Positions 2,697-64,000 of a stretch of DNA of 64,000 bases are shown here, in pieces. Under the pieces are notes generated by a model. The model was not told the DNA's origin. It worked only from the letters and a program-made list of their open reading frames with translations, and did not search any database. The translations under genes and the position numbers were made by a program. This stretch comes from Anthoceros angustus. Taxonomy: Eukaryota; Plantae; Anthocerotophyta. The stretch spans positions 558,001 through 622,000 of the forward strand of contig VJWM01000118.1 of the NCBI GenBank assembly GCA_010909165.1. Direction: 5' to 3'. The first letter of the stretch is position 1. Every line of letters begins with the position of its first letter.

Positions 2697-3557
2697 CTAC
2701 TGGTCTGTTTTGGGCAACAGCGCATTGGCCAGTTCCACATACTTCTTACAGGAGGGCCTAGCACTGAGATCCTCCCACCAAGCGTACACATGCTTCCGGC
2801 TCTTGAAGATCTCGACACCCTCAGGATATGTGCGGAGCAGCCAAAGGGTGGGCCCGAAGTGCGATAAATCAGCGAGGGAAATGCCGTCACCAGCAAGATA
2901 TTTGTGTTTGGATAGCTGAGCTTCGTAGACATCCAACACCGCCTCCAGCTTCTTTACGTTCTCTTGAACCTTAGCCTCGTCTCCTGGCCTGCCCAAGAGC
3001 CCCAGGGGATAGAATTTCTCCGACACAATGCCCCGAGTGCAAGTGCTGTAGTTATGCTGCAGCACATCCAGCCACTGGTTCACCTGGCTTCTAGCCCTCA
3101 GATCCTTAGGGTAGAGCTCAGTTCCCTGCCCAGCAAACTTGTCTGCGATGTAGGACGAGATGGCACGAGACTCTGCAAGCATCGACCAGCAGAGCATGCT
3201 CAGAGGGTCAGACAATCAGACCACGTATGCAAAATTGTACTACCGAAGAAGGAACATGACACTCACCGAAGAGACTGTAGTCTCCGTCTTTGATATATGG
3301 CATTTGTCCGAAGGGCTGCAAGCCAGAAAATTCAATCGTGAAGTGAACACATTTCGGTAGCAGCCAGTCGCCTGTTCTGGTCATGCAAACCCGGAAATGC
3401 AAAGACTGACCTGCATTTGCAGATGGACTGGCTGCTTGTGGGCACGAGAAGGAATGTCCACAGTGACAAACTCGAATTCTGCATCCTTCTCCCACAGGCT
3501 GATGAGAACAATGCCCGTGAAGGGAGATGGGCCGAAACCGAACAGCTCGATCGTCAT
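2697..3557 (-). CDS. Phi-class glutathione S-transferase (3 exons)
   Basis: MTIELFGFGPSPFTG...HKQPVHLQMQ / PFGQMPYIKDGDYSLF / ESRAISSYIADKF...LDVYEAQLSKHKYLAGDGISLADLSH; typical Phi two-intron layout. Confidence 0.92.
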
Positions 3558-3634
3558 GGCCTGAAAGTGCTTGGCGCCGAGGGCTGCAGGAGAGAGAGCT
3601 GATGGCCGATATAAGAGGGCAGGATCGGGCTTCG

Positions 3635-3640
3635 TTTATA
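3635..3640 (-). promoter_or_regulatory. Probable TATA box of the GST at 2697-3557
   Basis: TATAAA ~80 nt upstream of ATG; same spacing as at the GST at 33.7 kb. Confidence 0.5.
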
Positions 3641-3825
3641 CCGTCGGCAGACGAGTAGGAAAGCGCCAGGGAAAGCAGGAAGAAGCTGTACCGGAAGCAG
3701 CTCAAGCTTCAGGATTTGATTATCTCACATACCAGACGAATTTATGGGCTTTCATGTTTGGAGGCTATGCGGTCCCATTCCCGCAGCTTCCACGTCACAG
3801 CTTGCGGCATTGCTTGGTCTAGACT

Positions 3826-4663
3826 CTAGTGCTTGATCTTAGGGTAGGAGGGTCCAGCCAGCTCCCAGTACTTTTGAGCGGAGCTACGACTGGTGATGTC
3901 TTCCCACCATGCCTGCACATGCTTCCGGCTGCTGAAGCTCAGGGCCAGCTCAGGGGCAATGTTTCTCAGCCAGAATGTGGAGGCGATGTGGGCGATGTCT
4001 GCCAGGGAGAAGAAGTCGCCGGCAAGGTACTTGTGCTTGGATAGTTGGGCTTCGTAAATGTCCAGCACTTCGTCCAGCTTCTTGAGGTTCTCTTGAGCTT
4101 TAGCCTCGTCTCCTGGCCTGCCCCAGAACCTGGGAGCGTAGAACTTCTCCAATGCGATGTTGAACCCGAATGTGCTGTAGCTGTGGGATTCCACTTCCAT
4201 CCACTGGTTCACAGCGCCCCTAGCCTTCGGGTCTTGGGGGTAAACGTCGGTTCCTTGTTCTGCAAACCTGTCTGCAATGTACCTAACAATGGCACGAGAC
4301 TCTGCCCAAGCATCACACAAGAACCATGTCAACTGAGTTTAATTGCAGTAAGCCTCGCCCACATGGATCACACTCACCGAACAGCTCCAAGTCTCCGTCT
4401 TCGATGTAGGGAACCTTTCCGAAGGGCTGGCAGGCAGATGAAGATGTAGATTAGGTCAGGAAACAGGATCTGCAAGGCCCACAAAGGGGGTGAGATGGAG
4501 CAAAAGTGTACGGTACCTGCTTGGCCAGATGAGGCAGCTGCTTGTGGGCCCCCGCGGCCATGTCGACAGGCACCACCTCGAAGGCTGCATCCTTCTCCCA
4601 CAGAGTGATGAGAACAGTGCCGGTGAAGGTGGACACAGGGACGCCGTGCACCTTGATCACCAT
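3826..4663 (-). CDS. Phi-class glutathione S-transferase (3 exons), tandem paralog
   Basis: MVIKVHGVPVSTFTG...HKQLPHLAKQ / PFGKVPYIED / ESRAIVRYIADRF...WMEVESH...YLAGDFFSLADIAH. Confidence 0.92.
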
Positions 4664-14025: not shown

Positions 14026-14624
14026 CCCCGGAGTGCAAAGCTCCAGCTGCCCGCTTTTCTCCCTGTTTGCCTTGGTCCGCCCGTCACCGAGCAAACCCAT
14101 TACTCTTAGCTCCTTCCTCCCAGGCCAAAGACTCAGAACTACATGAACAGCAGCACAGTAAGCAAAACCCTAGGCCCTGAATCACGTCTCAACATCCTTC
14201 GTGCGGTCAAAGACACCATCCAACGCTCGCCACACTGTACGCAGGAACAGCTCCCAAGCAAAACACGTTTCCCTCCAACGGAGACTCAAAATTGAGGAAA
14301 GAGAAAACACAAGTACGACGCTGCTCTCAAGGTTCTGCTTCTTGTTGATTTTACTCAACCCTCGATCTCCCTTTTTTTAGTCCAGATCTCTCATCCCAGT
14401 AGAAGAAGAAGTCTATTTGAGTCCTGTACTGTTCCGCCAGCAGCACGCTAATCTGCAGCGTTCTGATGGCATCACGGATACCTCGATAGAGGAAGAAACG
14501 GAAAAACGTCTCATTTCTGCAACAACCCAAATCATAAAAACAGAGCATCTCTTCCCCGTGGAGGAACTGCAGCATCTGCGCATAGCAAGAGCCTCAGCTG
14601 GGACTGCTGCTGCTGCTGGTGCAG

Positions 14625-15875
14625 ATGGATGGAGTGGAGAGGAAGGCAGTTGCGGTGATCATGGTAGGTGGCCCGACAAAGGGCACACGCTTCAGGCCCC
14701 TTTCTTTGAAGCTCGCCAAGCCTCTGTTCCCCCTGGCAGGACAGCCGATGGTGCATCACCCGATTCTTGCATGCAAGAAGATCCCCAATCTGGTGCAGGT
14801 TTATCTCGTAGGGTTTTACAAGGAGGAAGATTTCGCGTTGTACGTTTCTGCGCTGTCCAGCGAGTTGAGAATTCCTGTGAGGTATCTCCATGAGGACAAG
14901 CCGCAGGGCTCGGCTGGTGGGCTGTACAGATTCCGGGATTTGATCATGGAAGATGGCCCGGAAGACCTCATAGTGCTGAATTGCGACGTGTGCAGCAGCT
15001 TCCCATTGCTGGAGATGCTGGAGGCGCACAGGAAGCACCAGGGGCTTGGGACGTTGCTGGTCAAGCAGGTGGCCCGGGAGGCGGCCATGGAGTTTGGAGA
15101 GCTGGTGGCGGATGCGGCCAGCGGAGAGCTGGTGCATTATACCGAGAAGCCGGAGACTTTTGTGAGCGAGTACATCAACTGCGGAGTGTACATTTTCACG
15201 CCTGAAATCTTCACAGCAATTGAGGAAGCGTTCCGTGCCGGGTCGAATAGAGCAGGTCTTAGACGGATTTCCAGCTTCGAGGCACTGCAGTCTGCCACCA
15301 AGACGATTCCAACGGACTTCTTGCGGCTGGATCAGGACATTCTAACCCCGCTGGCCGGGAAGCAGAAGCTGTACACGTATGAAACGAGCGATTTCTGGGA
15401 GCAGATCAAGACTCCAGGCATGGCGTTGCGTTCTTCTTCTCTGTACCTGGAGCAGTACCGGATTGTGCAGCCTGAGCTTCTGGCTAAGCCAGGGGATGGG
15501 ACGAAAAGTGCGATCGTAGAGGGCGATGTTTACATCCATCCTTCTGCGAAGGTGCATCCTACTTGCAAAATTGGTCCCAACGTTTCCATCTCTGCCAATG
15601 CTCGAATTGGTGCCGGTGTGAGGCTGCGGGAGTGCATCATACTGGATGGTGTGGAGGTGAAGGAGCATGCCGTGGTGATTCATTCCATCGTGGGATGGAA
15701 ATCCCAACTGGGAAGATGGTCTCGGGTGGAAGGGGTAGCTGCCCATTCAGAGAAGCTGGGCATCACCATTCTAGGTGAGGACGTTGTTGTGGAAGACGAG
15801 GTGGTAATAGAGAACTGCATCGTGCTACCACACAAGGTGCTAAGTCACAATGAGGCTGACGAAGTCATCCTCTGA
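14625..15875 (+). CDS. Mannose-1-phosphate guanylyltransferase alpha / KONJAC-like (GMPPA), intronless
   Basis: AVIMVGGPTKGTRFRPLS, LVHYTEKPETFVS, FWEQIKTPG, hexapeptide beta-helix C-terminus; uninterrupted ORF. Confidence 0.93.
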   Translation: MDGVERKAVAVIMVGGPTKGTRFRPLSLKLAKPLFPLAGQPMVHHPILACKKIPNLVQVYLVGFYKEEDFALYVSALSSELRIPVRYLHEDKPQGSAGGLYRFRDLIMEDGPEDLIVLNCDVCSSFPLLEMLEAHRKHQGLGTLLVKQVAREAAMEFGELVADAASGELVHYTEKPETFVSEYINCGVYIFTPEIFTAIEEAFRAGSNRAGLRRISSFEALQSATKTIPTDFLRLDQDILTPLAGKQKLYTYETSDFWEQIKTPGMALRSSSLYLEQYRIVQPELLAKPGDGTKSAIVEGDVYIHPSAKVHPTCKIGPNVSISANARIGAGVRLRECIILDGVEVKEHAVVIHSIVGWKSQLGRWSRVEGVAAHSEKLGITILGEDVVVEDEVVIENCIVLPHKVLSHNEADEVIL

Positions 15876-16428: not shown

Positions 16429-18145
<1,717 letters not shown>

Positions 18146-19313: not shown

Positions 19314-22300
19314 TTACAGTTCTAGTATGGTTTCACCACCTCTCTCCCCCTGAAGTGATGTGCCATCTGCCTGCCTGCGAGAGTCGGCATATCGCAGCCG
19401 GAGGTTGGCTGGGACATGTGTTGCAGCCAGGACATCCTTAGCCGCATCGCCGCCCTTGAGAGAGAGAGATTGTTTCCAGGCTTCGGCTGCCTCGTTCCTT
19501 TGCTTTGTTCCGTGTCGAAAGAAGAAGACGATGACTGTCATGTCATCGTGATAGTCTCTTCGTTGACCTCCAGGCATCTGAAGCAGCTCGCTGTATGCCA
19601 CCTCGTGCTTCCTCGCTGCCTTCTGTAAAGCGTATTTAACAAGGAAACGTGCAATGTCCTGCGAGACATCCCACGAATGTTTTGGAACGAAAGAACTACT
19701 TTGGGGAGATTGCTTAAGAAACGTTTATCCGGTGACTTGATTTACCTTTCTGCCGTGTGCCGAAACGATTTCCACAGCTTCTTCGTTGCTCACATATTCC
19801 CATAGTCCATCAGATGCCAAAATAAGGAACTCGTCATTAGCAGAGAGCATATGAAGTGACACGGATGGCTCGGAGGATACTAACGGTGGTACAAAAGGCC
19901 CCGGAACACGAAATCTGGAAAACAAAGGATCTCGGTTGAATTCTAGGTGTTTCATGAACAAATCTCCAAAGCAGCGAGTCACCTGCCAGGTCAGCCAAGG
20001 GTACCACTTGCATCAGAATTATACTCTCAAGGCTGCAGCATTGAAAAAAACATCTTTGTGCATTCCGCTGACCTGAAGTTTTCCTTTAATCCTCCAGATC
20101 CCATTCTTCTCCCACACCAGATTCCCACCACAGCAAGCTTCATGCGCTCGTGTGTAAGCCTCCCTGACATCAGGTATGTTCACGTTGTCATCCTGTGACA
20201 GCTGAACGGGATATAGGCCGTCCTTCCCCCTACAACCCAGGACAGCTCTGCTATCTCCCAGGTTTGCAATGAACAATGTCTCTCCTGTTATGATGGCTAC
20301 GATGGAACAAGAGCCAACTGTGGCTAAGTGCGGAGATTTCTGAAAAGCATCTCGAACAATGTCAATGAACTGTCCCTCTGTGCTTGCAAATGCAGCTTTG
20401 ATCCCTTCCACAGACACCTTTCCATGATTTTGCACAAAGCGACCTGCCCCACAGCCAGTAATCAATTAGGACCCACTCCTGCATTTTTGTCTTACCACAA
20501 GCTGGATCACTAGTCATCAATCAGTGGAACAAAACAACAATGAAATCGTGCACAAGTCACATACTCTTTAGATTATCGTACAGATGGTCCTTCAAATATT
20601 TCGATGCTTCTGTACCCCCATGACCATCATGGATTCCAAGATATACACCGCTAAGAGTTGCCTCCACCTTAAATCACCCATTGACTATGGTCAGCAAAGA
20701 CTTTTATGACAACTACCTCAGCACTTCAAACCTGCAAAGCTTGTTTGTTTAGCCTCACCTCACCAGTGTCCTCCATGAAATAATTGGCTTCATACATTGC
20801 AAATGAGAATTCTCCAAAGGCTGTTCGCTTTAGAGACTTGTGCCAGAGTGAGCTTTTCAAAGACCTGTCTCCTTTGCGAGGTAACAGGACAGCTTTGATT
20901 CGACGAAATTGTCCCACAGAAAAGATCTTCCTATCTCTCACAAAATCAATACGACTCCGGCGGTCCCGGCGGAGAAACTCAGTTGTGTCCTTGTCCTCAC
21001 CGCCATGAAATGCTAAATCCAAGCCAGCCTGCAATAACAATAATGCTGGATGAAGTCTGCAAAAATCTGAAGCAAAGCTCTCCAACACATGCACCTTCAT
21101 GGGCTTTGTTGAATATCACCTCTTCTTCCTGCCGGTCCACCCGTAGAGCATTGAAGAAGGCAAGAAGATAGAATAATACAAAACTTGATATCCCAACCCA
21201 CAGATATACTGTGAATAATCCTACCATCTGGATGCCAGGAATAGGTAATCAGGCGATATTATCTCATTCCACAGCCTCCCACAACAGAAAAGAAATTGTT
21301 GGGAATCTTGCCTGGACGAACAACTGCCTGAACCCACCGCCGTGGAACAGCCCGTAACTTCTGGGGTGCAGAATGTTGAAGGACTTGCGGATATTGTATG
21401 GTGTGGAGAACAAGCCGACAGCCAGACCTCCCCAAGTGCCACAGAATAGGTGTACAGGCGCAGCCATAACCACGTCATCTATCTGGCACTTTATCATGAC
21501 CTTGACTCCAGCAAGATAAAAAAAACCGGAGATCAAACCTGCACACATCATGCCCATCAGAACAGTGGTAACAACACATGATACCAAGTCAGCAACAGAC
21601 TTACTTGGATGCATCACCAAGCGAGTTTCCACCCAGACAATGAAGAGAGTAATGGAGCTCACCTATGACAGCTGCACCATATGGCTGCACGACACTGCTT
21701 GTGGCACATGCTGCTACCAAGCCACCGATCACGGCATTGAACACATCCTCGGGTTTTGATTTTTTGTTGACCGTTTGGGTAAAAATGTAGACCACAAACC
21801 CCGAGAATGCTGCTGTTAACGTAGTGTTCTGAGCCACTCGTGCCAGCTCTACTGTCCAGACTACATTTTGATCTTGTATAATGTCAACAGGACCTGTGTT
21901 GAAGCCAAAAAAGCTAACCCACAGCAACACTGTGCCTGCTGCCACCAAAGCCTGCGAGAGGTAGCACATGTTAATGTTTGGTCAACAGCCAGAAGAGAAA
22001 GCCAGCGAAGCCTCCACTACCACAACGTTGTCACTGACTGACTCAAGAGGAACAAGCATCCACACTCGCCACAGGAACGGTTCAGAAAACCTAAAAACCA
22101 ATGAGATTGATTCACGAACCACGGAGTGACTTTGCATAGGCACAGGATTCCCCTCGATGTCAAACCTGCCAATTCTAGGTCCCACCATCCACGCCCCTAC
22201 AAGTGCAGTCACTCCCCCAGTGACATGGACCACCATGGATCCCGCATTGTCCAACACGCCATCTGTACCAAGTATTCTTGCCGAGCTGTTGGCACTCAAC

Positions 22301-23075
22301 AGGCCCTCTCTCGACCATATCAGATGAGCTGTTATTGGGTAGATGAAGGAACTCAGGAAGAAGCTGGTACACATGTACCAAAGTGTCAGAAACTAAAACT
22401 TACATCCCCATGACTGACTCTGGCAGACTACGAAGGGGAGCAAACTGAAAGCCTTGGAGCTAGTTAAAACCCGAGCAAAAGACACTCGCCAGGAGAGGAG
22501 AACCCGTACCTGTAGATCAGATAAGCTCGCAGTTGCGTACGTTCAGCAATAGATCCAGCAATGATATTCGCACACGTTGTAGCAAAAGCTAGCTCAAAGA
22601 AAAACTTGAGCTGCTCACGATCACCAGAAAACGCCGGCTTGCCGTCTGAATACTTCCAACCTATAACCTCATTCCCGTACCCAAACCCGATGGCATACCC
22701 AAACAGCCAGAATGAAATGACACAAATGCACATATCCAGCACATTCTTGACCATAATGTTGCGGGTGTTCTTCACACGCACAGTGCCAGCTTCTATCAAA
22801 GAGAATCCCACCTGCAGCAAAATCCAACCACACCAGAACTTTTAACAACACAACAAGACCACAACACTCTCAGGTCAATCCCCAGAACCGCAGCACAGTG
22901 ACTATACCTGCATGAGGAAGACGAAAAAAGCCGCCTGGAGTTTCCACAGGTCGGCAGAGATCCTCCCATTGTCAGAATTGCTCTTCGCCAGAGCATCCAA
23001 TACTGACGAAATGTTGGCAATTTGGCTCTGGATTTCTCCAATTGTAGAAGGATCCAGCTCCTCCCCCGGATCCAT
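19314..23075 (-). CDS. Ammonium transporter (AMT) - clade D PP2C phosphatase fusion protein, 11 exons, ~887 aa
   Basis: Exons 23075-22908, 22811-22510, 22363-22120, 21951-21663, 21538-21312, 21227-21120, 21028-20759, 20667-20565, 20443-20073, 19982-19746, 19658-19314 sum to 2664 nt in frame. AMT motifs MQVGFSLIEAG, GSIAERT, DNAGSMVVHVTGG, GPRIGRF, FGFN, IDD...VHLFCG, EEEAGLDLAFHGG. PP2C motifs LWHK..FGEFSFA, MED, DGHGG, ANLGDSRAVLG, LILASDGLWE, HDDMTV. Confidence 0.9.
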
Positions 23076-32859: not shown

Positions 32860-33737
32860 TTACTTTGTAGTGGTAGCGGGGAGGGCAATAGGAGAGAACT
32901 CCAAATACTTCTTAACGGAGGGCCTACTGCTGACATCCCCCCACCAGGCCAGCAAGTGCTTCCAGTTCTTCATGTTCTCCGCAATCTCAGGAGACAAAAG
33001 GAGGAGCCAATGGAACGCTATGACGTGTCCCAGATCTGCGATGGTAACGGTGTCACCGGCCAGGTACTTGCGCTTGGAGAGCTGGGCATCGTAGACGTCC
33101 AATGTTTCCTCCAACTTCTTGATGCTTTCCTGAGCCTTAGCCTCGTCTCCTGGCAAGCCCTTCAGCCTGCTGGCAAATCTCTCGTGCGCCAATTCTTGAA
33201 CATGCTTGCTGAAGTTATGAGCCTCCACATCGATCCACTGGTTTACCAAGCTTCTTGTCTTGAGATCCGTAGGGTAGACGTCAGTTCCCTGACCTGCAAA
33301 CCTATCTGCAATGTACCTCGCAATAGCACGAGACTCTGCACCCATGACAGCAGTAGAAGCAGGCAGGATACAGGCGCACGGTCAGGCACTTGTCAACGGG
33401 AGCTGAAAACAAACGCCTGCAACGCAAGCGAAGAAAGGGGCCCGGATCTCACCGAACAAGACATAATCTCCATCTTCTATGACGGGGATCTTTCCGAAAG
33501 GCTGAAACCGGAGCAGATGAAACCGCATTAGACCTTCCATGAGACTCAAATTCACAGAAAGCGGCAAAGCCTCGAAACAAATGTATTTACCTGCAAAGCC
33601 AGATGCGCCGGCTGCTTGTTGGCACCGCCGTACACGTCCACAGGCAGCAACTCGAATTCAGCATCTTTCTCCCACAGAATAAGCAGAACCAAGCCCGTGA
33701 AGGGAGAGCCCGCACTGCCATGCACTTTGATCGTCAT
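32860..33737 (-). CDS. Phi-class glutathione S-transferase (3 exons)
   Basis: MTIKVHGSAGSPFTG...NKQPAHLALQ / PFGKIPVIEDGDYVLF / ESRAIARYIADRF...YLAGDTVTIADLGH. Confidence 0.92.
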
Positions 33738-35358: not shown

Positions 35359-37947
35359 TCAATGCTGATCCCCACATGAACAACTGCCATCCAGGAAACG
35401 GTGCACTCGGTGTGCATCTCGCACTATGATCTCTCGCTTTTCAAGACGTGACATGATCTTGGTGCTACTGTGACAGTCATCACACATGCGGAGATTTTTG
35501 GTGACTAGCAAAGTTGCACCATCTGGAGTATTCAAAAGACCGTAGGCCAATGCCAGTTTCTCTGCATGCCCGCACAATGCATCTTCCTTCTCCTGCTCAG
35601 ACACTGGCTTCAGCACCAGCTTCGTTTGTGGTACATGGCCTCCTTCCTCCTTCAACCTCTTATTCACGCTCCTGAGAGTGGATGAAATATCGGACCTGTC
35701 GTCTCCAACTTTAAACTCATGCACTTTGTTCTCCACTTCGATACACGCCTTGGCAGCCTTCTTACAAGCTCCTGCCGTCTTTCTCATGCCTTCTATTTCA
35801 TCCACATCACTCCACATGCCTGCATCTGCGTAGATGTTGCCCAACAAAACGTAAGCAGACGCATTTTCAGGCTCTAATTGTAGAAGGCGGTGAAAACATC
35901 GCCTTCCACGCTCTGCATCGCCATAGGGTTTACACGCACTCAGCAGAGATCGCCACCCGACGACATCATTCCCAAATGGCATGGTCTGCAGAAAATGTTC
36001 TGCCTCGTCCAGATGCCCTGACCGCGCAAGAAGATCAACCATGCAGCTACAATGGTAATCAGTAGGTACAATGCCATACTCCTCCTGCATCATCTTGAAA
36101 TATTGCCGGCCCTCGTGCACCAGGCCTGCATGGCTGCATGCGACAAGAATACAACTAAACGCAGTATCATCTGGCTTAACGCCGTGCTGACACATTTCCT
36201 TGAAACACTCCATTGCCCTTTGACCATCACTCTGTTCAGCATAGCCATTGAGCAAAGCACTCCAAGTCACCACATCTCTTGTAGGCAGTGTGTCAAACAC
36301 CTTGCGGGCATCATCCAAGCACCCACATTTTGCATACATATCCACCAGAGAGTTGCCAACCAACAGGTCATCTCCCAGGCCCATTGTGCGAATCTGTAAA
36401 TGAAGCTGCTTGCCCTGATGCAGTGCACCCGTGCTGGCACAGGCTTGAAGGAGGCAGACGAATGTAACATTATTGGCTGGAGTGATTCCCTTCTGCTGCA
36501 TAGCTGCATAAAGATCGAGGGCTGCCTGACCCATCCCCTGCTGAGCATATCCTGCAATCATGGCAGTCCATGTCACCACATCCTTCCTAGGCATCCGCTC
36601 AAAAACTGTCCGAGCATCCTCAACACTCCCGCATTTGGCATACATGTCCACCAGACAGTTGCCAACCAGCAAGTCCGCTTGCAGTCCCTTTCGTTCTATC
36701 TGTGCATGAAGCTCCTTACCCTGATGCAGAGCGCCAACAGCAGCACACGCTTGCACAAGGCACACAAAGGTCACACTATCAGCTACATTGACAGCCTCAT
36801 TTTGCATACACAGATACAGAGCAAGGGCTTCATGTCCAAATCCCTGATGAGAATACCCTGCGATCATGGCTGTCCAAGTCACCACATTTCTAGAAGGCAG
36901 TCTGTCAAACACCCTGCGAGCATCTTCCAAACTGCCACACTTCCCATACATGTCCACCAAACCGGTACCGATAAACTCATCACCTTCCAGTCCCCTTTCT
37001 TGAACCTGTGCATGAAGGTCCTTCCCAATGTGCAAATCTCCCACAGCAGCACAAGCTTGAAGGAGGCAACCAAACGTAACACGACTCCCCGGAGTGCCAC
37101 CTTCCTGTCGCATCCTCGAGTAAAAGGAGAGAGCATCCCGCCCCAGCCCCTGCTGCGCATACCCTGCGATCATTGCATTCCACGACACCACATCCCTGGA
37201 CGGCAACTCCTCAAACACTCTCCTCGCAGCCTCCAAGCTCCCGCACTTGGCATACATGTTCACCAGGCTGTTCCCCACGAACACATCGCCATGGGCAGCA
37301 GCAGCAACAACATCCGCATGCACCTCCTTGCCAGCCACCAGGTCTCCTGCAGCGGCACACGCCTTCAGAACCGCCATGAAAATGTGGCTGTCTGCCTCCT
37401 CGCCGGACTCTCGCATCCGCCGATAAAGACTGATAGCCTCCCCCGGCTCTCCATGTCGGGCATGCACCAAGATGATGGCGGCCCATACATGAGCGTCCGG
37501 CGCAGCGCAGTTCCGAAACACCTGCACTGCCTCCTCCAATCTGCCGTGAGCAGCGTACATCCGGATGATATGGTTCCCTAGGAATGCGCTACCCTCGTAA
37601 CCGCTCCTCACAGCAAGCGCGTGAACGCGCCTGCCAAGCCCCAAATCCCTGTCTTGCATGCACCTCTTGAGCACAAGATAGAAAACAGAGGTAGGAGCAC
37701 ATTCTCCCCGCTCCACCAGAAAATGCAATGCTTCCACAGCGTCTCCCAGCTCCGCCTCCTCGCAGCGCCTGCTCAGCTCCTCCACGGAATACGTCACGGA
37801 AGACTGCGTTTGTGCCTTGCGTAGGATTCCATCAACTCGTCGCTCTTCCCTCGGTGACAGCGCCCAGATCGAGCTTCCCGATTGTTCCTTCGTCACCACA
37901 CTTCCCCAATCACAAGCTGCCAGAACCGGCAGCTCCATCCTCGCCAT
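35359..37947 (-). CDS. PLS-class PPR protein with E and DYW:KP-type deaminase domain (C-terminus DQH), intronless; start approximate
   Basis: Repeated GNSLVDMYAKCGSLEDARxVF/DVVTWTAMIAGY units; E domain; KKAAKACIEV, CGHAEKLALAYGL, KNLRMCDDCH, CSCGDQH. Confidence 0.93.
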   Translation of the reverse strand: MARMELPVLAACDWGSVVTKEQSGSSIWALSPREERRVDGILRKAQTQSSVTYSVEELSRRCEEAELGDAVEALHFLVERGECAPTSVFYLVLKRCMQDRDLGLGRRVHALAVRSGYEGSAFLGNHIIRMYAAHGRLEEAVQVFRNCAAPDAHVWAAIILVHARHGEPGEAISLYRRMRESGEEADSHIFMAVLKACAAAGDLVAGKEVHADVVAAAAHGDVFVGNSLVNMYAKCGSLEAARRVFEELPSRDVVSWNAMIAGYAQQGLGRDALSFYSRMRQEGGTPGSRVTFGCLLQACAAVGDLHIGKDLHAQVQERGLEGDEFIGTGLVDMYGKCGSLEDARRVFDRLPSRNVVTWTAMIAGYSHQGFGHEALALYLCMQNEAVNVADSVTFVCLVQACAAVGALHQGKELHAQIERKGLQADLLVGNCLVDMYAKCGSVEDARTVFERMPRKDVVTWTAMIAGYAQQGMGQAALDLYAAMQQKGITPANNVTFVCLLQACASTGALHQGKQLHLQIRTMGLGDDLLVGNSLVDMYAKCGCLDDARKVFDTLPTRDVVTWSALLNGYAEQSDGQRAMECFKEMCQHGVKPDDTAFSCILVACSHAGLVHEGRQYFKMMQEEYGIVPTDYHCSCMVDLLARSGHLDEAEHFLQTMPFGNDVVGWRSLLSACKPYGDAERGRRCFHRLLQLEPENASAYVLLGNIYADAGMWSDVDEIEGMRKTAGACKKAAKACIEVENKVHEFKVGDDRSDISSTLRSVNKRLKEEGGHVPQTKLVLKPVSEQEKEDALCGHAEKLALAYGLLNTPDGATLLVTKNLRMCDDCHSSTKIMSRLEKREIIVRDAHRVHRFLDGSCSCGDQH

Positions 37948-38129
37948 GCAAACCCTAGCTGACGCATCGCCTAAGACGCCGGCGCCATCGCCATCGCTGA
38001 AAGCCTTGCAAGTTGCTTCGTCCTGCTCCGCGACGGGCTGAAGGGCTGGACATGGACGGAGACGGTGAGTTTGATTGCATTGTAAAAAAGCTAAATGTGC
38101 CTTGGCGACACCTACGTATTGTGTGTCCA

Positions 38130-40443
38130 AATGACTTAGGCCAAATGGACACACAATTTATAAGAACGTCGTTATTAAGCATCCTGGGCTTAGATGGGGT
38201 GCCTAAAGGGAGTGGATGCCCTTGGTGCAAGTAGCTTAGGCGGGGTGCGTAAAGGGAGTGGATGCCCTTGGTGCAAGTAGCTTAGGCACACCATAGTGCA
38301 AGTAGCTTAGGCACACCATAATACAAGTTGTTAAGTATCAAGTCCCATGACGGAAATTCCGTCCTTAGTGGACTTAAATAAAATTCTTCTTCTTCTTCTC
38401 TTCTTATGTAGTCTAGACTTAAAGTGGATCAGCTCATACTCTGGGTTCGATTGCCAACTTCGGAATGCGTAAAAACTTATCACTTATTTTTTAGTTGAAA
38501 ACTACAAATACTTTTCCGTAGTAAATCACATGAAAACTACAAATACTTTCCCGTAGTAAATCACATGAAGTCTATAATTGACTTATGGCATGCACATGGA
38601 GTCTATAATAGACTTCTAGCTTACTAGATCGTTTAACAAACCTTACCCGGGACATCGTGTAATAGACCCTACTCGGGACGTCGTTCACCAGACCCTACCC
38701 CAGACCCTACCCGGGATATCGTTTGACCCTACTTGGGACAATGTTTGCGAGTATGTTATTCTCAACCTTCCCGGGTGGGCGGCGGTAACGAAGATCCACT
38801 AGTACTCTCCCAATTGGTTTGCAAGCATGTTATCCTCAACCCTCCTGGGTGGGTGGCTGCAATGAAGATCCACTAGTACTCTCCCACTTGGTTTGCGAGC
38901 ATGTTATTCTTAACCCTCCTTGGTGGGCGGCGGCAATGAAGATCCATTAGCACTCTCCCACTTGGTTTGTGAGCATGTTATCCTCAACCCTCTGGGGTGG
39001 GCGGCGGCAATGAAGATCCACTAGTACTCTCTCACTTGTTCTAGGGATCGCTTAACAGACCCTATCCGGGACAAGGTTTGCGAGCATGTTATCCTCAACC
39101 CTCCTGGCTGGGCGCCGGCAATGAAGATCCACCAGTACTCTCTCACTTGTTCTAGGGATCGCTTAACACACCCTACGCGAGACAAGGTTTGCGAGCATGT
39201 TATCCTCAACCCTCCGGGAAGGGATGTGAGACAGATGGCGAAGATCCACTAGTACTCTCCCATGCAGGATGACCACGCCTTCATCCCTTGCTATCGTAAC
39301 TCACGGTGCCATAGGCAAGATTTCTCCAGGTTTGTCAAGGCTTCTGCCAAGGCTTACCACTCTCGCAACAATGGGGTTGGTCTCCCCCTTTCTAGTATTG
39401 TGACTTTCTTCAGGCAATGGACCAACCCCCTTTCATGAGGCAATGGACCAACCCCCTTGCGTGTGCACCAACCCCCTTTCGTGAGGCAATGGACGAACCC
39501 CCTTTCGTGAGGAGCAACCCCGTTTCGTGTGGACCAACCCCCTTTTGTGTTTTGTGACTTTCTTCTGGCGTCCATCGCTCTGAAGCGGGCGCTAGCGAAC
39601 GAAGTGTATAGGACGAGGGTAAGCGTAGGGATGTGGTATCTTTGGCCACGGTGGTAGGTAGACTTTTCCTCTCCGAACCACAAAATTCTCAGATTACGAA
39701 ATTTCGGAATAGTTTCAATATGAGTGATAGTTTGGCTAGTCTCCTTGGCCTGGTGCCCTCCCGAGGGTTGCACCCCCTTTTCCTTGGGTAATGAAATTTC
39801 CCAATTTCTTTGTTTTATTTTTAAGTCTCCACGTTCCTTCACGTTCACTTTCTTTTGTGTGACCAAATGGCCTAGGCCAAATGGACACACATTTATAAGA
39901 ACGCCGTGATTAAGCATCCTGAGATGGGGTCGGTACTTAGATGGGGTGCCTAAAGGGAGTGGATGCCCTTGGTGCAAGTAGCTTAGGCACACCATGATAC
40001 AAGTTGTTAAGTACCAAGTCCCATGACGGAAATCCGTCTTTAGTGGACTTAAATAAAATTCTTGCTCTTCTTCTTCTTCATATCAGCTTGAGTTCAAACC
40101 TAGCCCTAACAACCTTCTACCCACATTCAAACTATTTCAGCTCCAACAATAGGCTACTTCCTCTTCTTCTTCTTCAACAATCCACCGGTACTTAGATGGG
40201 GTACCTAAAGGGAATGGATGCCCTTGGTGCAAGTAGCTTAGGCACACCATGGTACAAGTTGTTAAGTACCAAGTTGTCCCATGACAGAAATCCGTCTTTA
40301 GTGGACTTAAATAAAATTCTTGTTCTTCTTCTTCTTCATATCAGCTTGAGTTCAAACCTAGCCCTAACAACCTTCTACCCACATTCAAACTATCTCAGCT
40401 CCAACAATAGGCTACTTTCTCTTCTTCTTCTTCAACAATCCAC
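38130..40443 (+). mobile_element. Non-coding repetitive element with ~280-bp direct repeats (38130-38405, 39865-40080, partial 40187-40340) and internal tandem arrays
   Basis: ggccaaatggacacaca...gcccttggtgcaagtagcttaggcacaccat...cccatgacggaaat..ccgtc.ttagtggacttaaataaaattctt repeated. Confidence 0.6.
38743..39262. repeat. Diverged tandem array of ~74-bp (and ~110-bp) units
   Basis: gtttgcgagcatgttatcctcaaccctc...gcggcaatgaagatccactagtactctc repeated ~6 times. Confidence 0.85.
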
Positions 40444-44270: not shown

Positions 44271-46944
44271 ATGGGCACCGAAAGCACCTCCACCCCTGCA
44301 CCCCGGGGCCGCGGAAGTTTTCTGGGTCGGCTTGACGACGATGGGCTGCCAGGATCCGATTCTGGCAAAGGCCTTGGCCATGCCACTCCCTTGCAAAACA
44401 AGTTCCAAGAGAAGATCCGCCCGATGCTCGATGTGGTGGACAAGCTCAGGAACTTGGGGGTGATGGAGGAAGGCATCGCCTTGCCCACCATCGTCGTGGT
44501 GGGCGATCAAAGCAGCGGGAAGTCCAGTGTTCTGGAATCACTCGCGGGAATCACTCTCCCCCGCGGGCAGGGTATCGCCACCAGAGTACCCTTGATTCTT
44601 CGGCTGCAGACCAGGTGAAAGTTTGTGGGCGGTAGACGTCGACACTTGTTCTGAATTTTCAGTACCTGATGTGATGTACAACACTGTGTTTTGATTTTGG
44701 AACACGCAGTGACGAGGAAAGAATCACGATCGAGTACACTGGAGTGAAAGAGGAGATTCATGAGGAGGATGGCATCGAAAAGGCTGTTGTGAGGGCGCAA
44801 AATGAACTTGCCGGCGATGGGAAGGGGATTTGCGACAGTCCCATCTCGCTGCACATCCGGAAGCCTGATGCGCCGGATTTGACTATGGTCGACCTCCCGG
44901 GTATCACCCGGGTCCCTGTCCACGGCCAGCCAGAAAACATCTATGAGCAGATCGCTGGCATTATTCGGCATTACATCACTCCGCCGGAGAGTGTGATTCT
45001 CAATGTGCTTTCCGCTAGTGTGGATTTTCCAACCTGCGAGAGCATAAGAATGTCCCAAGTTGCAGACAAACCAGGAAAGAGGACCTTGGCTGTGGTCACC
45101 AAGGTGAGTCGCCCACAAGCAGTCAGTCTATTTTGTTGCGTTGTTCTTTGTGCAGCAGAGCTTTCTGAGCGCTCGAAGTCGGCGTGGATCTATGGAAATC
45201 TAGAAGTGCTAACCGATTCCTCATCCAAATTTTGGCAGGTTGATAAATCGCCTGAGGGCCTTCTCGAGAAGGTCACCACAGACGCAGTGAACATCGGTCT
45301 GGGTTACATCTGCGTCCGGAACAGGATAGCGGAATCGGAGTCTCATGAGGAAGCAAGAATGATCGAGAAATCGTTGTTTGACACACATCCGCTTTTGTCC
45401 AGGCTCGACAAGCGCATCGTCGGGATTCCAGTACTGGCCGATCGGCTGACGCAGATACAGGCCGACAGTATTCGGCGGCTTCTGCCTGACATCATTTCAC
45501 AGATAGAGAAAGGTTTTACCCATCTGTTTACAAGCAGGAGTACTAGAAGATTTTCCTTATGTGTTTCTCAATCTTAAGACAGGAATTATCTGTCTGCAGG
45601 ACTGCAGAGCAAGAGGCAGGAGCTGGCAAGCCTGCCTCAAGGAATGAACAACAACGCCGAAGCCTTCATGGTGTTCTCGAAAACCATGGCAGCCAGAACA
45701 GAAACTGTGAAGCAGTTAGTTGTCCGGGGAGACAACACACAGAGTTGCTTTGCAGAGGATAAGAAAATGCATTACACAGCGAGATTAGACGACATGTTTT
45801 CTGGTATTGTCTTTTCTGGTGCCCTGAAGCCAGGAAGCATATTTGGGTCCATGGGTGAACTACTGATAGGGAGCTTTTTTGTTCATTTCCTTGTGCACAG
45901 CCTTTGCGGAGTATATGCGAGAATCAGGCAGAGGATTGATGGATCCTTCAAACACAGATGAGATCATGGACATGATCGGTGAAAGTAAAGGGACCAGTCT
46001 CCCTAATTTTCTCCCCTCGTCGGTGTTCCAGAACTTGGTAAAGAGGCAGGTCGACAAGATCGCAGCAACCTGTGATACTCTCGTCCAAGATGCACACTCG
46101 TACGCTGATCGCGTGCAAATTGAGGTATGAAATTCTGTAGATTTTCACGGTTAACTGTTTACAGTAGTCTCTACAATTTACATCTGTATTTGCTGGTCAG
46201 CTGAGATTTCACCACATCTGTAATCACCATGTCAGGTGATTGGAAATTCCACTTCCGGCTATCCAGCCCTGAAAGCTGCCACCGAGGTGGCAGCCCGTAC
46301 CGTGATTTCTGAAAGCCGCACCGATTGTGAAAGGTTTGTGGAAAGGATGCTGGCCAAGGAGCAGGCTATCATCTTCACGAAAACCGCGCTGTACATAAAG
46401 TTGGTGAATAGTATGAAAAGTGTACAAGATCAAGAAAAATTGGATGTGGACAGCGAGGCAGAGAGAAATCGAGAGGGACTTTTGAAATTCGTCCAAGACG
46501 AAATTGGACAATTTGATTACACAGAAGTGAAGGGGAAGACTTCAAGTGACTTTCTGGTTGGACTGCTACTGCAACTCATGCTTAGTGTCGTCAATAAGAA
46601 TTTCATTGCCTGCAATTGGATCTCACAGTGTCGAACAATCGTGTTGCCATTTGCAGACAGCGTGGGACATGAAGGTTTCTCTTGCAGCCTATTGGGCGGT
46701 GGTGAGCAGCAGAATATCTGATATGCTGTCCCAGGAAATAAAATACTCGTTGCAGGAGGCTATGGTTGGTGGTGTGTTAAATCGTCTTCTGCTCCAAACG
46801 TCGGCTGCAGGGTTCCAGTTCCATAAACTCATGGACGAGGACAGTGTACTCGCTCAAAGACGGCGCAGATTAACCCATAGTGTCGAAATTCTGAGACAAG
46901 CGAGAATTGCCGTGTCAGAAACTCTAGGGAAGGCTAGTAGCTGA
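44271..46944 (+). CDS. Mx-like dynamin-related protein (DRP4 family), copy A, apparently intact
   Basis: [58 protein letters not shown], middle domain, GED-like C-terminus AYWAVV...[15 protein letters not shown]. Confidence 0.88.
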
Positions 46945-56420: not shown

Positions 56421-59155
56421 ATGGTCCGCAAATGGTCCAAGACCCTTGCACTGAGCACCAGAAATCTTCCGAGTCCGGTTGCTCAGGATGAGCCACCAGT
56501 CCAGGAGCTTCCGCGTCCTGATTCTAGCCATGGCCCTGGCCATGCCACTCCTGCAGAACAAGTTCCAAGAGAAGATTCGACCGATGCTCGATGTCGTGGA
56601 CAATCTCAGAAACTTGGGGGTGATGGAGGAAGGCATCGCCTTACCCACCATCGTCGTGGTGGGCGATCAAAGCAGTGGGAAATCGAGTGTGCTGGAATCA
56701 CTCGCAGGGATCAGCCTGCCGCGCGGGCAGGGTATCGCCACCCGGGTGCCATTGATTCTTCGGCTGCAGACCAGGTAAACGTTTGTGGGTGGTAGACGTC
56801 GACACTTGTTCCGAATTTTCAGCACCTCATATGATGAACACTTTGTTTTGATTTTGGAACCCCCAGTGACGAGGACAGAATTACGATCGAGTACACTGGA
56901 GTGAAAGAGGTGATTGAAGAGAACGGCATCGAGATGGCGGTTGTGACGGCGCAGAATAAGCTTGCTGGAGATGGGAAGGGGATTTGCGACAATCCCATCT
57001 CACTGCACATCCGGAAGCCTAGTGCACCGGATTTGACTATGGTCGACCTCCCGGGTATCACCCGAGTCCCTGTCCACGGCCAGCCGGAGAACATATATGA
57101 GCAGATTTCTGCCATTATTCGTCATTACATCACGCCACCGGAGAGTGTGATTCTGAATGTGCTGTCCGCTAGTGTGGATTTCCCAACCTGCGAGAGCATA
57201 AGAATGTCCCAAGTTGCGGACAAAGCGGGAAAGAGGACCTTGGCCGTCGTCACGAAGGTGAGTTGTCCACTATTTTCAAGTCTATTTATTGGGTTATTCC
57301 TTGTGCATCAAAACTTCTTGAGCGCTGGAAGTCTGCGTGGATCGATGGTAACTTCGAGGTGACTGTGTCTCTTTTCTATCATCAGGTTGATAAATCACCA
57401 GAAGGCCTTCTCGAAAAGGTCACCACAGACGCAGTGAACATCGGCCTGGGTTACATCTGCGTCCGGAACAGGGTAGCGGAGTCAGAGTCTCATGTGGAAG
57501 CAAGAACGATCGAGAAATCGTTGTTTGACACACATCCGCTTTTGTCCAAGATCGATAAGCGCATCGTCGGAATTCCTGTACTAGCTGATCGGCTGACGCA
57601 GATACAGGCCGACAGTATTCGGCGACTTCTGCCAAACATAATTGCGAAGATCGAGAAAGGTTATATCCACCTGTTTACAAGCAGCAGTAGCACTACAGGT
57701 TTTCTTCCATGTGACTCTCATGCCCGGAGTGGACTTCATTGACTGCAGGACTGCAGAGCAAGAGGCAGGAGTTGGCAAGCCTGCCTCAGGGAGTGGAGAA
57801 CACCGCTGAGGCTTATGTGGTGTTCTCGAAAACCATGGCGGCAAGAACAGAAACTGCCAAGCAGTTAGTCGTTCGGGGAGACTGTACTGACTGCTTTGCG
57901 CAGGATAACAAAATTTTGCACTACACGGCAAGATTGGATGATATGTTTTCCGGTATGGACGAGTACCTTTCATCTTCTCGTTATCGCTGCCCTGAAAGCA
58001 GACATCGTGCTACCATAACGTTTACCGTCTAGATTCATGCCCTGGTCCTTGCGATTTCATGAATACTGATGGGCAGTTGTTTTGTTATCTTCCGCGCAGC
58101 CTTTTCGGAGTATATGCAGAAATCAGGAGGAGGATTGATGGATCCTTCAAATACCGATGAGATTATGGAGATGATGGCTGAAAGTAGAGGAACGAATCTT
58201 CCCAATTTTCTGCCCACGCAGGTGTTCCATAGCCTCGTAAAAAGGCAGGTTGACCGGATTGCCGATGCTTGTGATAGTCTCGTCCTTGAGACACACTCGT
58301 ACGCAGATCGCGTGCAAATGGAGGTATACATCTTCGTGGATCTTCGGGATTCTTGGTGTCTTCTGGGCACCATTAGAGTTGACCTTGTTTGGAATTGCCT
58401 TGTCAGGTGATTGAAACCTGCACAGTCGGCTATCCATCCTTGAAGTCTGCCACCGAGGTGGCAGCCCGTGCAGTAATTGCTGAAAGTCGGAGCAACTGTG
58501 AAAGGTTTGTGGAGAGGATGCTAGCCAAGGAGCAAGCTATCATCTTCACCAAAACCAGACTCTACATGAAATTGGTGAAAGCTATGGCCGCATGTGTGCA
58601 AGAGCAAAACGAATCGAAGAATGAGGACAGCGAGGCAGAAAGAAATCAAAAAGAGATTCTAAAATTCGTCCAAGATGGGGTTGGAGATTTTGACCCCACA
58701 GAAGTGCACAGGAACAAATCCTCTAGTGACTTCCTGGTTAGACTGCTACTGCAACTGATGCTTGGTATCGCACCCTATTGAAATTGCACAGGTAATATCT
58801 TCCAGATAGATTTTCGTTGCCTACAATTTGATCTGACAGTGTCGAACAATCGTGTTGGTACTTGCAGACAGCTTGGGATATGAAAGTATCTCTGTCGGCC
58901 TATTGGGCGGTAGTGTGCAGCAGGATTGCAGATGTTCTCTCCCAGGAGATTAAATTCTCCTTGCAGGAGGTCATGGTGGCTGGCGTGCACGATCGAATGT
59001 TGCTACAAACCGCGACTGCAGGCTTCCAATTTGACGGACTGATGGACGAGGATAGTGTTCTTGCTCAGCGACGACGGAGATTGACCCATAGTGTCACCAT
59101 CCTAAGGAAAGCCAGATCTGCTGTTTCAGAAACTCTGGGGAAGGCTAGTAGCTGA
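56421..59155 (+). CDS. Mx-like dynamin-related protein (DRP4 family), copy C, near-intact (indel near 56550)
   Basis: MVRKWSK start, full GTPase motifs, middle and GED exons; gccactcctgcag vs gccactcccttgcag in the sister copy. Confidence 0.8.
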
Positions 59156-63200: not shown

Positions 63201-64000
63201 TTAAGAAGTGTGACTTGTCAAGACAGAGGTAGCTTTCTTAGGCTTTATTGTCTCTGATGGCATTAATGGTGAGGGCCATTCAAGATTGGCAACCTCCTAG
63301 GAACATTCATGAGGTTCGCTTTATGGGTTTGGCTTACGTATGGAGATTTGTACATATGTTTGCTAAGATAGCAGCCCCATAACGACCTCTTAAAGATGAC
63401 GAAAGCTTGGAAGTGGGATCTTTGAATGTCAAGATTGAATACTTGAAGATGAAATTGAGTACAACTCGGTTTTAGGAATGTATGATCCCAAGAAGGATGT
63501 GGAAGTGTCTGATGCCTCGGGCGTGGCCATAGGTGGAGTGTTGATGCAAGACCATAAGCCGATAGCTTTTGAGTCAAGGAAATTGCATCCTTATGAGTTG
63601 AAGTATACCACCTATGAGAAGGAAATGACTACTGTCATTCATTGTTTGAAGGTATCGAGACACTATCTCTTGGGCAGATCTTTTGTGCTCTATACTGATA
63701 CTATTAGCACAACATACTTCTCTAACCAATTGAAATTGAATGCAAGACTAACTAAATGGCAAGATTTCCTAGCTATGTATGATGTGACTCTCAAGTATAA
63801 ACCTGGAAAAGAGAATAAGGTTGCGGATGCGCTGAGTCACAAAAAGAGTCAGGAAGTAAAGGCAATGACAATGCTGGTTGAACCTATGGACACTCACAAA
63901 CAGATCAAGGAAGCATATCTGCAGGATCCGGATGTTCGTGGATTAATGGAATAGAGCGAGAAGGAAGCAAGTTCAAATTGAGGATGGTTTGTTGATATAC
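60224..64000 (+). mobile_element. Ty3/gypsy LTR retrotransposon (5' LTR ~60224-60840, gag, protease, RT, RNase H), frameshifted, running off the window
   Basis: LTR begins TGTAA; PBS TGGTATCAGAGC; protease LLDSAATHNF; RT YLDDILIFS; RNase H DASGVAIGGVL...IAFESRKL; PR-RT-RH order. Confidence 0.92.
60843..60854 (+). promoter_or_regulatory. Primer binding site complementary to initiator tRNA-Met
   Basis: TGGTATCAGAGC just after the LTR end. Confidence 0.9.

What the first reader, a model, noticed from the sequence alone, without database searches (positions are those of the whole stretch)
19314..23075. Ammonium transporter fused to a clade-D PP2C phosphatase: candidate plant ammonium transceptor
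Seen: 11 exons splice into one 2664-nt ORF (~887 aa), with ten canonical-type introns (nine GT-AG, one GC-AG). The fusion does not depend on a splice guess. Exon 21028-20759 reads without a stop from the AMT C-terminal motif AGLDLAFHGG through a basic linker into the PP2C-D N-terminal motif (SLWHKSLKRTAFGEFSFAMYEANYFMED). The PP2C half has no separate start or promoter space. Its metal-binding motifs are intact (ED, DGHGG, GDSR, SDGLW, HDD). Established: Amt proteins fused to signalling domains act as ammonium sensors in bacteria (e.g. Amt-histidine kinase). Plant PP2C.D phosphatases dephosphorylate plasma-membrane H+-ATPases and are inhibited by SAURs, and plant AMT1 is controlled by C-terminal phosphorylation. 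I know of no plant AMT-PP2C fusion, but could not search. Inference: a membrane sensor coupling ammonium to dephosphorylation of H+-ATPase or AMTs. If the host is a hornwort, it could relate to ammonium supplied by symbiotic cyanobacteria.
Basis: partly seen in the sequence, partly recalled or inferred. Interest (0 to 1): 0.95.

Follow-up and report, generated by a model that had tools for sequence, protein, structure and literature searches.

The report
Ammonium transporter–phosphatase fusion (AMPC)
This plant gene really does join an ammonium transporter to a protein phosphatase, but the same fusion was named in 2024 in green algae and early land plants; what it does is still untested, and its sequence fits an ammonium-linked signalling switch better than the self-regulating transporter first proposed.

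Summary
In detail: 11 minus-strand exons give 2664 nt / 887 aa without a stop, and exon 21028-20759 joins the AMT tail to a clade-D PP2C. It is not new. Zeng et al. 2024 (PMC11665922) named this architecture AMPC in charophytes and bryophytes, lost in vascular plants, function untested. I recovered it in Klebsormidium, Chara, Mesotaenium, Closterium and Marchantia. All 10 introns match Marchantia AMPC in position and phase, and both halves group with Marchantia. The host is probably a hornwort. The fusion predates hornwort-cyanobacterial symbiosis. My addition is a residue comparison. All 16 AMPC sequences have Ala/Val at the AMT1 phospho-switch Thr460, which argues against self-dephosphorylation at that site. 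They share two pore changes (F161N in 15/16, W212F in 16/16) and keep most of the N1/N2 ammonium pocket and the phosphatase metal ligands. Best reading: an ammonium-responsive membrane phosphatase acting on other proteins (about 0.4). The linker is flexible, so simple tethering is a close rival. No RNA test was possible for this genome. The scan had noted only this same stretch before.

The parts
22908..23075 (-). Exon 1, aa 1-56: start codon, N-terminal helix, start of TM1 (Q56 = N2-site Gln)
22510..22811 (-). Exon 2, aa 57-156: AMT; N1/N2 pocket E63, K78, N79, D82, N138 (Thr in all others), A141, Y153; Phe gate F132
22120..22363 (-). Exon 3, aa 157-238: AMT; W173, D195, N196 (family-specific, Phe elsewhere; codon 22248-22246), twin-His H203
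21663..21951 (-). Exon 4, aa 239-334: AMT; F252 (Trp212 equivalent), Phe gate F255, P259 (Ser219 equivalent; Pro only here and in Marchantia; codon 21891-21889)
21312..21538 (-). Exon 5, aa 335-410: AMT; D356, twin-His H364; followed by the GC-AG intron
21120..21227 (-). Exon 6, aa 411-446: last AMT helix and start of the C-terminal regulatory tail
20759..21028 (-). Exon 7, aa 447-536: junction exon; AMT tail with A452 at the Thr460 position (codon 21013-21011), about 48-aa basic linker (about 20998-20855), PP2C.D N-terminus with the first metal Asp
20565..20667 (-). Exon 8, aa 537-570: PP2C DGHGG motif
20073..20443 (-). Exon 9, aa 571-694: PP2C GDSR motif; D656 in place of a His conserved in the other AMPCs
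19746..19982 (-). Exon 10, aa 695-773: PP2C clade-D insert and SDGLW motif
19314..19658 (-). Exon 11, aa 774-887: clade-D C-terminal helices, HDD motif, variable tail, stop

Best explanation
Identity (shown, about 0.97): the gene is this plant's orthologue of the ancient streptophyte AMPC gene, one polypeptide with a complete AMT domain, a flexible linker of about 50 residues and a PP2C.D domain with all metal ligands. Mechanism (inferred, about 0.4): it forms an AMT-type membrane trimer. Ammonium passes a remodelled outer vestibule, the intact Phe gate and twin-His pair, and occupies the N1/N2 pocket or is carried through at a low rate. This changes the AMT's cytoplasmic face and tail, which releases or repositions the tethered phosphatase. 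The phosphatase then acts on other membrane proteins, most plausibly the plasma-membrane H+-ATPase C-terminus (the known PP2C.D target) or ordinary AMT1s, coupling ammonium supply to proton pumping or uptake. It cannot act on its own Thr460 switch, which is absent. Shown: gene structure, orthology, folds, residue patterns. Inferred: localisation, trimer, ammonium binding, coupling, substrates.
For: The fusion has been kept since before the Klebsormidium split, and window plus Marchantia are sisters in both domain trees. The AMT half forms one clade on a long stem (0.85, support 100) with family-wide pore changes: F161N in 15/16 vs 0/123 unfused relatives, W212F in 16/16 vs 4/123. That indicates a changed job. 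The Thr460 position is Ala/Val in 16/16 vs Ser/Thr in 79/123, and T460A strongly impairs AtAMT1;1 in yeast (PMC13745463; one earlier study saw only a minor effect). The Sd-Amt1 switch residues E29, K44, N45, D48, Y119 and Q22 are invariant in AMPC, whereas AtAMT1;1 has Cys64 in this pocket, apparently at the Glu position by spacing. The nearest solved structures are the sensors Ks-Amt5 and Sd-Amt1. Stand-alone Chara PP2C.D binds the H+-ATPase (PMC11665922).
Against: No functional data on any AMPC were found. The N1/N2 residues are also present in most unfused algal and protist AMTs (E in 98/123) and in transporting AtAMT1;1, which shows no ligand-dependent switch, so they are not diagnostic. 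Two N1 ligands deviate: S107 is Ala in 13/16 AMPC, and T104 is Asn in this protein alone. The linker is 47-88 aa, poorly conserved (5-41%) and predicted disordered (pLDDT <50 at 448-504 in Marchantia), unlike the HAMP coupling of Sd-Amt1. Closeness to sensor structures may only reflect shared Amt1-type ancestry, and no plant AMT1 was among the PDB hits. Single vestibule mutations have little effect on AtAMT1;1 transport. The 16 AMPC rows include several Closterium copies, so they are not independent.
Confidence: 0.42

Rival explanations
1. Tether without sensing: the AMT domain is a working or weak transporter that also anchors a constitutively active, or otherwise regulated, PP2C.D at the membrane beside H+-ATPase and AMT1. 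Ammonium does not switch the phosphatase.
For: The linker is flexible and variable. Phe gate, twin-His, D195 and D356 are intact, and these are the residues that matter for transport in AtAMT1;1. N1/N2 residues also serve plain transport. S107 is Ala in most AMPCs.
Against: A plain anchor would not explain the family-specific fixed pore substitutions or the long AMT stem. Stand-alone PP2C.D already reaches the H+-ATPase in Chara.
Confidence: 0.32
2. Autoregulated transporter (proposal of Zeng et al. 2024): the phosphatase dephosphorylates its own AMT domain to keep uptake on.
For: PP2C ABI1 activates AMT1s (PMC9516733). The linker has 2-15 Ser/Thr (5 here), and AMT1;3 has several tail sites (reference list).
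Against: The canonical site is Ala/Val in all 16 AMPCs, and the linker Ser/Thr are not conserved.
Confidence: 0.15
3. In this species the gene is decaying, or is expressed mainly as separate AMT and PP2C products.
For: 12 departures at 192 otherwise invariant columns, including T138N and H656D, against 6 for Marchantia. No RNA check was possible. One relative's contig (L001) starts within the last AMT helix.
Against: The frame is open over 11 exons, all introns are conserved, codon-position identities are 0.71/0.81/0.38, and branch lengths are close to Marchantia's. Chara and Klebsormidium show 18-30 such departures. The junction lies inside one exon. Relatives have uninterrupted 904- and 911-aa ORFs on short contigs.
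Confidence: 0.07
4. A hornwort device for sensing ammonium from symbiotic cyanobacteria.
For: The host is probably a hornwort.
Against: The fusion is present in non-symbiotic algae and Marchantia. Two hornwort symbiosis or N-starvation transcriptome papers mention no phosphatase or PP2C.
Confidence: 0.04

Closest known systems
AMPC (AMT-PP2C.D) of charophytes and bryophytes, Zeng et al. PNAS 2024, PMC11665922; e.g. Marchantia polymorpha BBN10952.1/OAE28726.1, Chara GBG59851.1, Klebsormidium GAQ77789.1 and GAQ84673.1
   Same: Same domain order, 69%/66% identity to Marchantia in the AMT/PP2C halves, 10 of 10 introns shared, same family motifs.
   Different: Only species-level differences: T138N, H656D, a GC donor at intron 5. 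Whether a hornwort copy is in the paper's figure table could not be read; the main text never mentions hornworts.
Bacterial ammonium receptors Ks-Amt5 (Amt-histidine kinase) and Sd-Amt1 (Amt-HAMP-diguanylate cyclase), PMC5764959, PMC11152129
   Same: Amt domain with a C-terminal signalling enzyme; Q, E, K, N, D, Y of the N1/N2 pocket kept; nearest solved folds.
   Different: Output is a eukaryotic Ser/Thr phosphatase, there is no HAMP and the linker is flexible, the full signature is not met, the fusion arose independently, and sensing is not shown.
Bacterial Amt-SpoIIE fusions
   Same: Amt plus PP2C-fold phosphatase (PF00909 + PF07228).
   Different: Their Amt domains sit on the bacterial side of the tree, apart from AMPC. 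The paper also finds independent origin.
Land-plant AMT1 (AtAMT1;1)
   Same: Amt1-type fold, Phe gate, twin-His, tail motif G-x-D-x-x-x-H-G-G.
   Different: Thr460 and Arg461 replaced by Ala and Phe; three of four conserved vestibule residues differ here (Q131/F199/S262 to E/N/P); no named land-plant AMT1 among the 120 best hits of the AMT half.
Stand-alone PP2C.D (SAUR-inhibited H+-ATPase phosphatases)
   Same: 36-43% identity and the same clade-D motifs and insert.
   Different: AMPC has its own motif variants (YEANY.MED vs VQAN.LED; HDGHGG; FGD vs IGD). SAUR binding is untested.

Membership tests
AMPC (AMT-PP2C.D) | N-terminal AMT domain and C-terminal PP2C in one ORF | tested here: met
   junction inside exon 7
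AMPC (AMT-PP2C.D) | PP2C domain of clade D | tested here: met
   Clade-D motifs and 51-67% identity to AMPC, 36-43% to angiosperm PP2C.D-type proteins. No clade-C outgroup was in my tree.
AMPC (AMT-PP2C.D) | Orthology to charophyte and bryophyte AMPC | tested here: met
   Sister to Marchantia in both domain trees (98 SH-aLRT; 0.96), AMPC AMT clade 100, 10/10 introns shared
AMPC (AMT-PP2C.D) | Transcribed as one mRNA in this organism | not testable with these tools
Ammonium receptors (AmR: Ks-Amt5, Sd-Amt1) | Full N1/N2 signature QX6EX15NX2D[FT]X54-60TX2[ST] | tested here: not met
   Q, E, N, D are present at the right spacing; the remaining three positions are M, N, A here. Other AMPCs mostly have T, T, A.
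Ammonium receptors (AmR: Ks-Amt5, Sd-Amt1) | Fused transducer whose activity changes with NH4+ | not testable with these tools
   needs an enzyme assay
Ammonium receptors (AmR: Ks-Amt5, Sd-Amt1) | Intact Phe gate and twin-His leading to the pocket | tested here: met
   F132, F255, H203, H364
Phospho-regulated land-plant AMT1 | Phosphorylatable Thr in the tail motif (T460) | tested here: not met
   A452; Ala/Val in 16/16 AMPC
Phospho-regulated land-plant AMT1 | Ammonium transport | not testable with these tools
   needs yeast or oocyte assay
Active PP2C phosphatase | Metal-binding Asp residues (ED, DG, GD, DG, DD) | tested here: met
   all present; PP2C fold in the orthologue's model; the non-ligand His656 is Asp here
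Bacterial Amt-SpoIIE | Amt domain of the bacterial lineage with a SpoIIE domain | tested here: not met
   eukaryotic branch of the tree, PF00481 not PF07228

The most novel reading that the evidence does not exclude
AMPC is a true single-chain ammonium receptor-phosphatase, the first in plants or any eukaryote to my knowledge: ammonium bound in its N1/N2 pocket switches a PP2C.D that controls the proton pump, and vascular plants replaced this input with SAUR control. The architecture is published, but this function and the family-wide loss of the Thr460 switch are not described in what I could search.
Probability: 0.3. Interest if true: 0.8.

Novelty: new member of a known kind. Interest (0 to 1): 0.4.

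Why it matters
Whether plants have an ammonium receptor is explicitly open: the 2026 AtAMT1;1 structure paper finds no transceptor evidence (PMC13745463). AMPC is the obvious candidate, has one descriptive paragraph in the literature I could search, and has an orthologue in the tractable Marchantia. The hornwort copy adds little by itself. The useful results are that the proposed self-dephosphorylation site is missing in every AMPC examined and that the pore carries fixed family-specific changes. Both give precise mutants to test.

Tried and rejected
The joined 887-aa model was not sent to any search or fold tool: searches were run exon by exon by reference, then with returned orthologue ids (P0006, P0018). 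The joined model was used only in local scripts for alignments and trees, and the structure shown is that of the Marchantia orthologue. A single-sequence fold failed (pLDDT 37); the alignment-based one worked. An exact look-up of a neighbouring window protein did not identify the host. The Atlas gave only plain AMT clusters. The first paper searches missed the key paper; the third found it. Its supplement is not held. The Klebsormidium intron mapping stalled at aa 340 (2 of the first 6 positions shared). Rejected: assembly join or read-through of two genes (conserved in five other genera, same introns); splice artefact (junction is inside an exon); bacterial Amt-SpoIIE origin (tree); symbiosis as the origin. 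No moss, lycophyte, fern or seed-plant protein with both domains was among the hits, but those searches are word-based and capped, so this is not proof of absence. One search returned nothing and was rerun; one search was a frame slip corrected.

Full report
Observation. Eleven minus-strand exons between 23075 and 19314 join to 2664 nt and translate to 887 residues with no internal stop; nine introns are GT-AG and intron 5 is GC-AG. The ORFs over exons 2-5 match Pfam Ammonium_transp and those over exons 9-10 match PP2C. Exon 7 (21028-20759) carries the end of the AMT tail, a basic linker and the start of the phosphatase in one frame, so the fusion does not rest on a splice choice. No second copy of either half lies in the window.

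Relatives. A search with exon 7 alone against 1.84 billion representatives gave 11 hits, five covering the whole exon. Two are complete AMT+PP2C proteins, from Chara braunii (GBG59851.1) and Closterium. Using these and the Marchantia protein as queries gave the same two-domain protein in Klebsormidium nitens (two copies), Mesotaenium, many Closterium strains, Marchantia polymorpha and M. paleacea. Logan contigs of 2.8-3.7 kb carry uninterrupted ORFs of 904 and 911 residues; these are probably transcripts, but I did not check the run types. No moss or vascular-plant protein with both domains appeared. The window protein is 69% (AMT) and 66% (PP2C) identical to Marchantia's and 52-62% to the algal ones. 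All ten introns coincide with Marchantia's in column and phase. Window and Marchantia are sisters in both the AMT tree (SH-aLRT 98) and the PP2C tree (0.96); the AMPC AMT domains form one clade (100) on a long stem among eukaryotic Amt1-type proteins, apart from bacterial Amt-SpoIIE. Codon-position identities to Marchantia of 0.71/0.81/0.38 indicate purifying selection.

Host. The gene is sister to, but far from, Marchantia. A PPR-DYW gene at 35359-38154 ends in DQH, resembling the hornwort DRH variant of DYW:KP (PMC9478123; resemblance only, no tree). A hornwort is therefore probable; earlier scan notes say the same.

Literature. Zeng et al. 2024 (PMC11665922) report that many PP2C.Ds of charophytes and bryophytes carry an N-terminal AMT domain, name this AMPC, find it independent of bacterial AMT-SpoIIE and lost in vascular plants, and suggest autoregulation of the transporter. 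Their interaction tests used the single-domain Chara PP2C.D. Further searches found no other paper on it. The finding is thus a new member of a described but uncharacterised family.

Anatomy. In the AMT half, the Phe gate (F132, F255), twin-His (H203, H364), W173, D195 and D356 are intact. Two pore positions are changed across the family: the F161 equivalent is Asn in 15 of 16 AMPCs and in 0 of 123 unfused relatives, and the W212 equivalent is Phe in 16 of 16 against 4 of 123. The S219 equivalent is Pro only here and in Marchantia. These counts include several Closterium copies. The AMT1 phospho-peptide GMDMT(p)RHGG (PMC9516733) aligns with GLDLAFHGG; the Thr position is Ala or Val in all 16 AMPCs and Ser/Thr in 79 of 123 unfused proteins. 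The N1/N2 pocket of bacterial ammonium receptors (PMC11152129) is mostly kept: Q56, E63, K78, N79, D82 and Y153 are invariant. The S107 equivalent is Ala in 13 of 16, and the T104 equivalent is Asn in this protein only. The pocket is also common in unfused AMTs and serves transport in AtAMT1;1, so it is compatible with sensing but not diagnostic. All PP2C metal-binding aspartates are present. An AlphaFold2 model of the Marchantia orthologue (mean pLDDT 82) shows two folded domains joined by about 57 low-confidence residues; its best structural matches are Ks-Amt5 and Sd-Amt1, then PP2C phosphatases. Linkers are 47-88 residues, mostly net basic and unconserved.

Mechanism. The most likely reading (about 0.4) is an ammonium-responsive membrane phosphatase acting on other proteins, such as the H+-ATPase C-terminus or ordinary AMT1s. 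It rests on the long retention of the fusion, the fixed pore changes, the loss of the Thr460 switch, the retained pocket and the intact catalytic site. Coupling and substrates are inferred. Simple tethering without sensing (about 0.3) fits the flexible linker. Autoregulation in cis (0.15) would need non-canonical sites. Decay or split expression in this species (0.07) is not excluded without RNA, but conservation speaks against it. A role tied to cyanobacterial symbiosis (0.04) cannot be the origin.

Limits. My trees lack land-plant AMT1 and PP2C.C outgroups. The species table in the paper's figure could not be read.

Verdict. Real, intact and ancient; already named; function open. New member of a known kind, interest 0.4.

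Noticed in passing
window 16429-18145 (-): Katanin p60-like gene. Its N-terminal part (ORF 17024-18145) and AAA domain (ORF 16429-17961) are in different frames, with the switch in a GC-rich stretch; small intron, frameshift or assembly error not resolved.
   Followed up: partly
window 35359-38154 (-): Single-ORF PPR-E-DYW gene ending in DQH with an HAEK active-site motif, resembling the hornwort DYW:KP 'DRH' candidate U-to-C editing factors.
   Followed up: partly
window 14619-15875 (+): Intronless GDP-mannose pyrophosphorylase-like gene.
   Followed up: no
window 2697-4332 and 32860-33345 (-); 44744-46721 and 56901-57742 (+): Several GST copies (phi-like) and two dynamin-related gene copies.
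   Followed up: no
window 60877-63954 (+): Fragments of what looks like an LTR retrotransposon (protease-like and RNase H-like ORFs, by eye).
   Followed up: no
P0020 (Klebsormidium GAQ84673.1) and P0022 (Closterium): The second Klebsormidium AMPC has Gly for the metal-binding Asp of the SDG motif, a possible pseudophosphatase; one Closterium copy has Gly for the Asp of FGD.
   Followed up: no
P0073 (ENA metagenome protein, 955 aa): Amt domain fused to a protein kinase domain (PF00069/PF07714), the mirror image of AMPC.
   Followed up: no
L001 1-400: A Closterium-like Logan contig begins in intron-like sequence and enters the last AMT helix: retained intron or an alternative start giving a nearly AMT-less phosphatase.
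   Followed up: partly
window codons for aa 138 (exon 2) and aa 656 (exon 9): T138N and H656D are unique to this protein at columns invariant in nine other AMPCs, each one base from the conserved residue; could be real or sequencing errors.
   Followed up: partly
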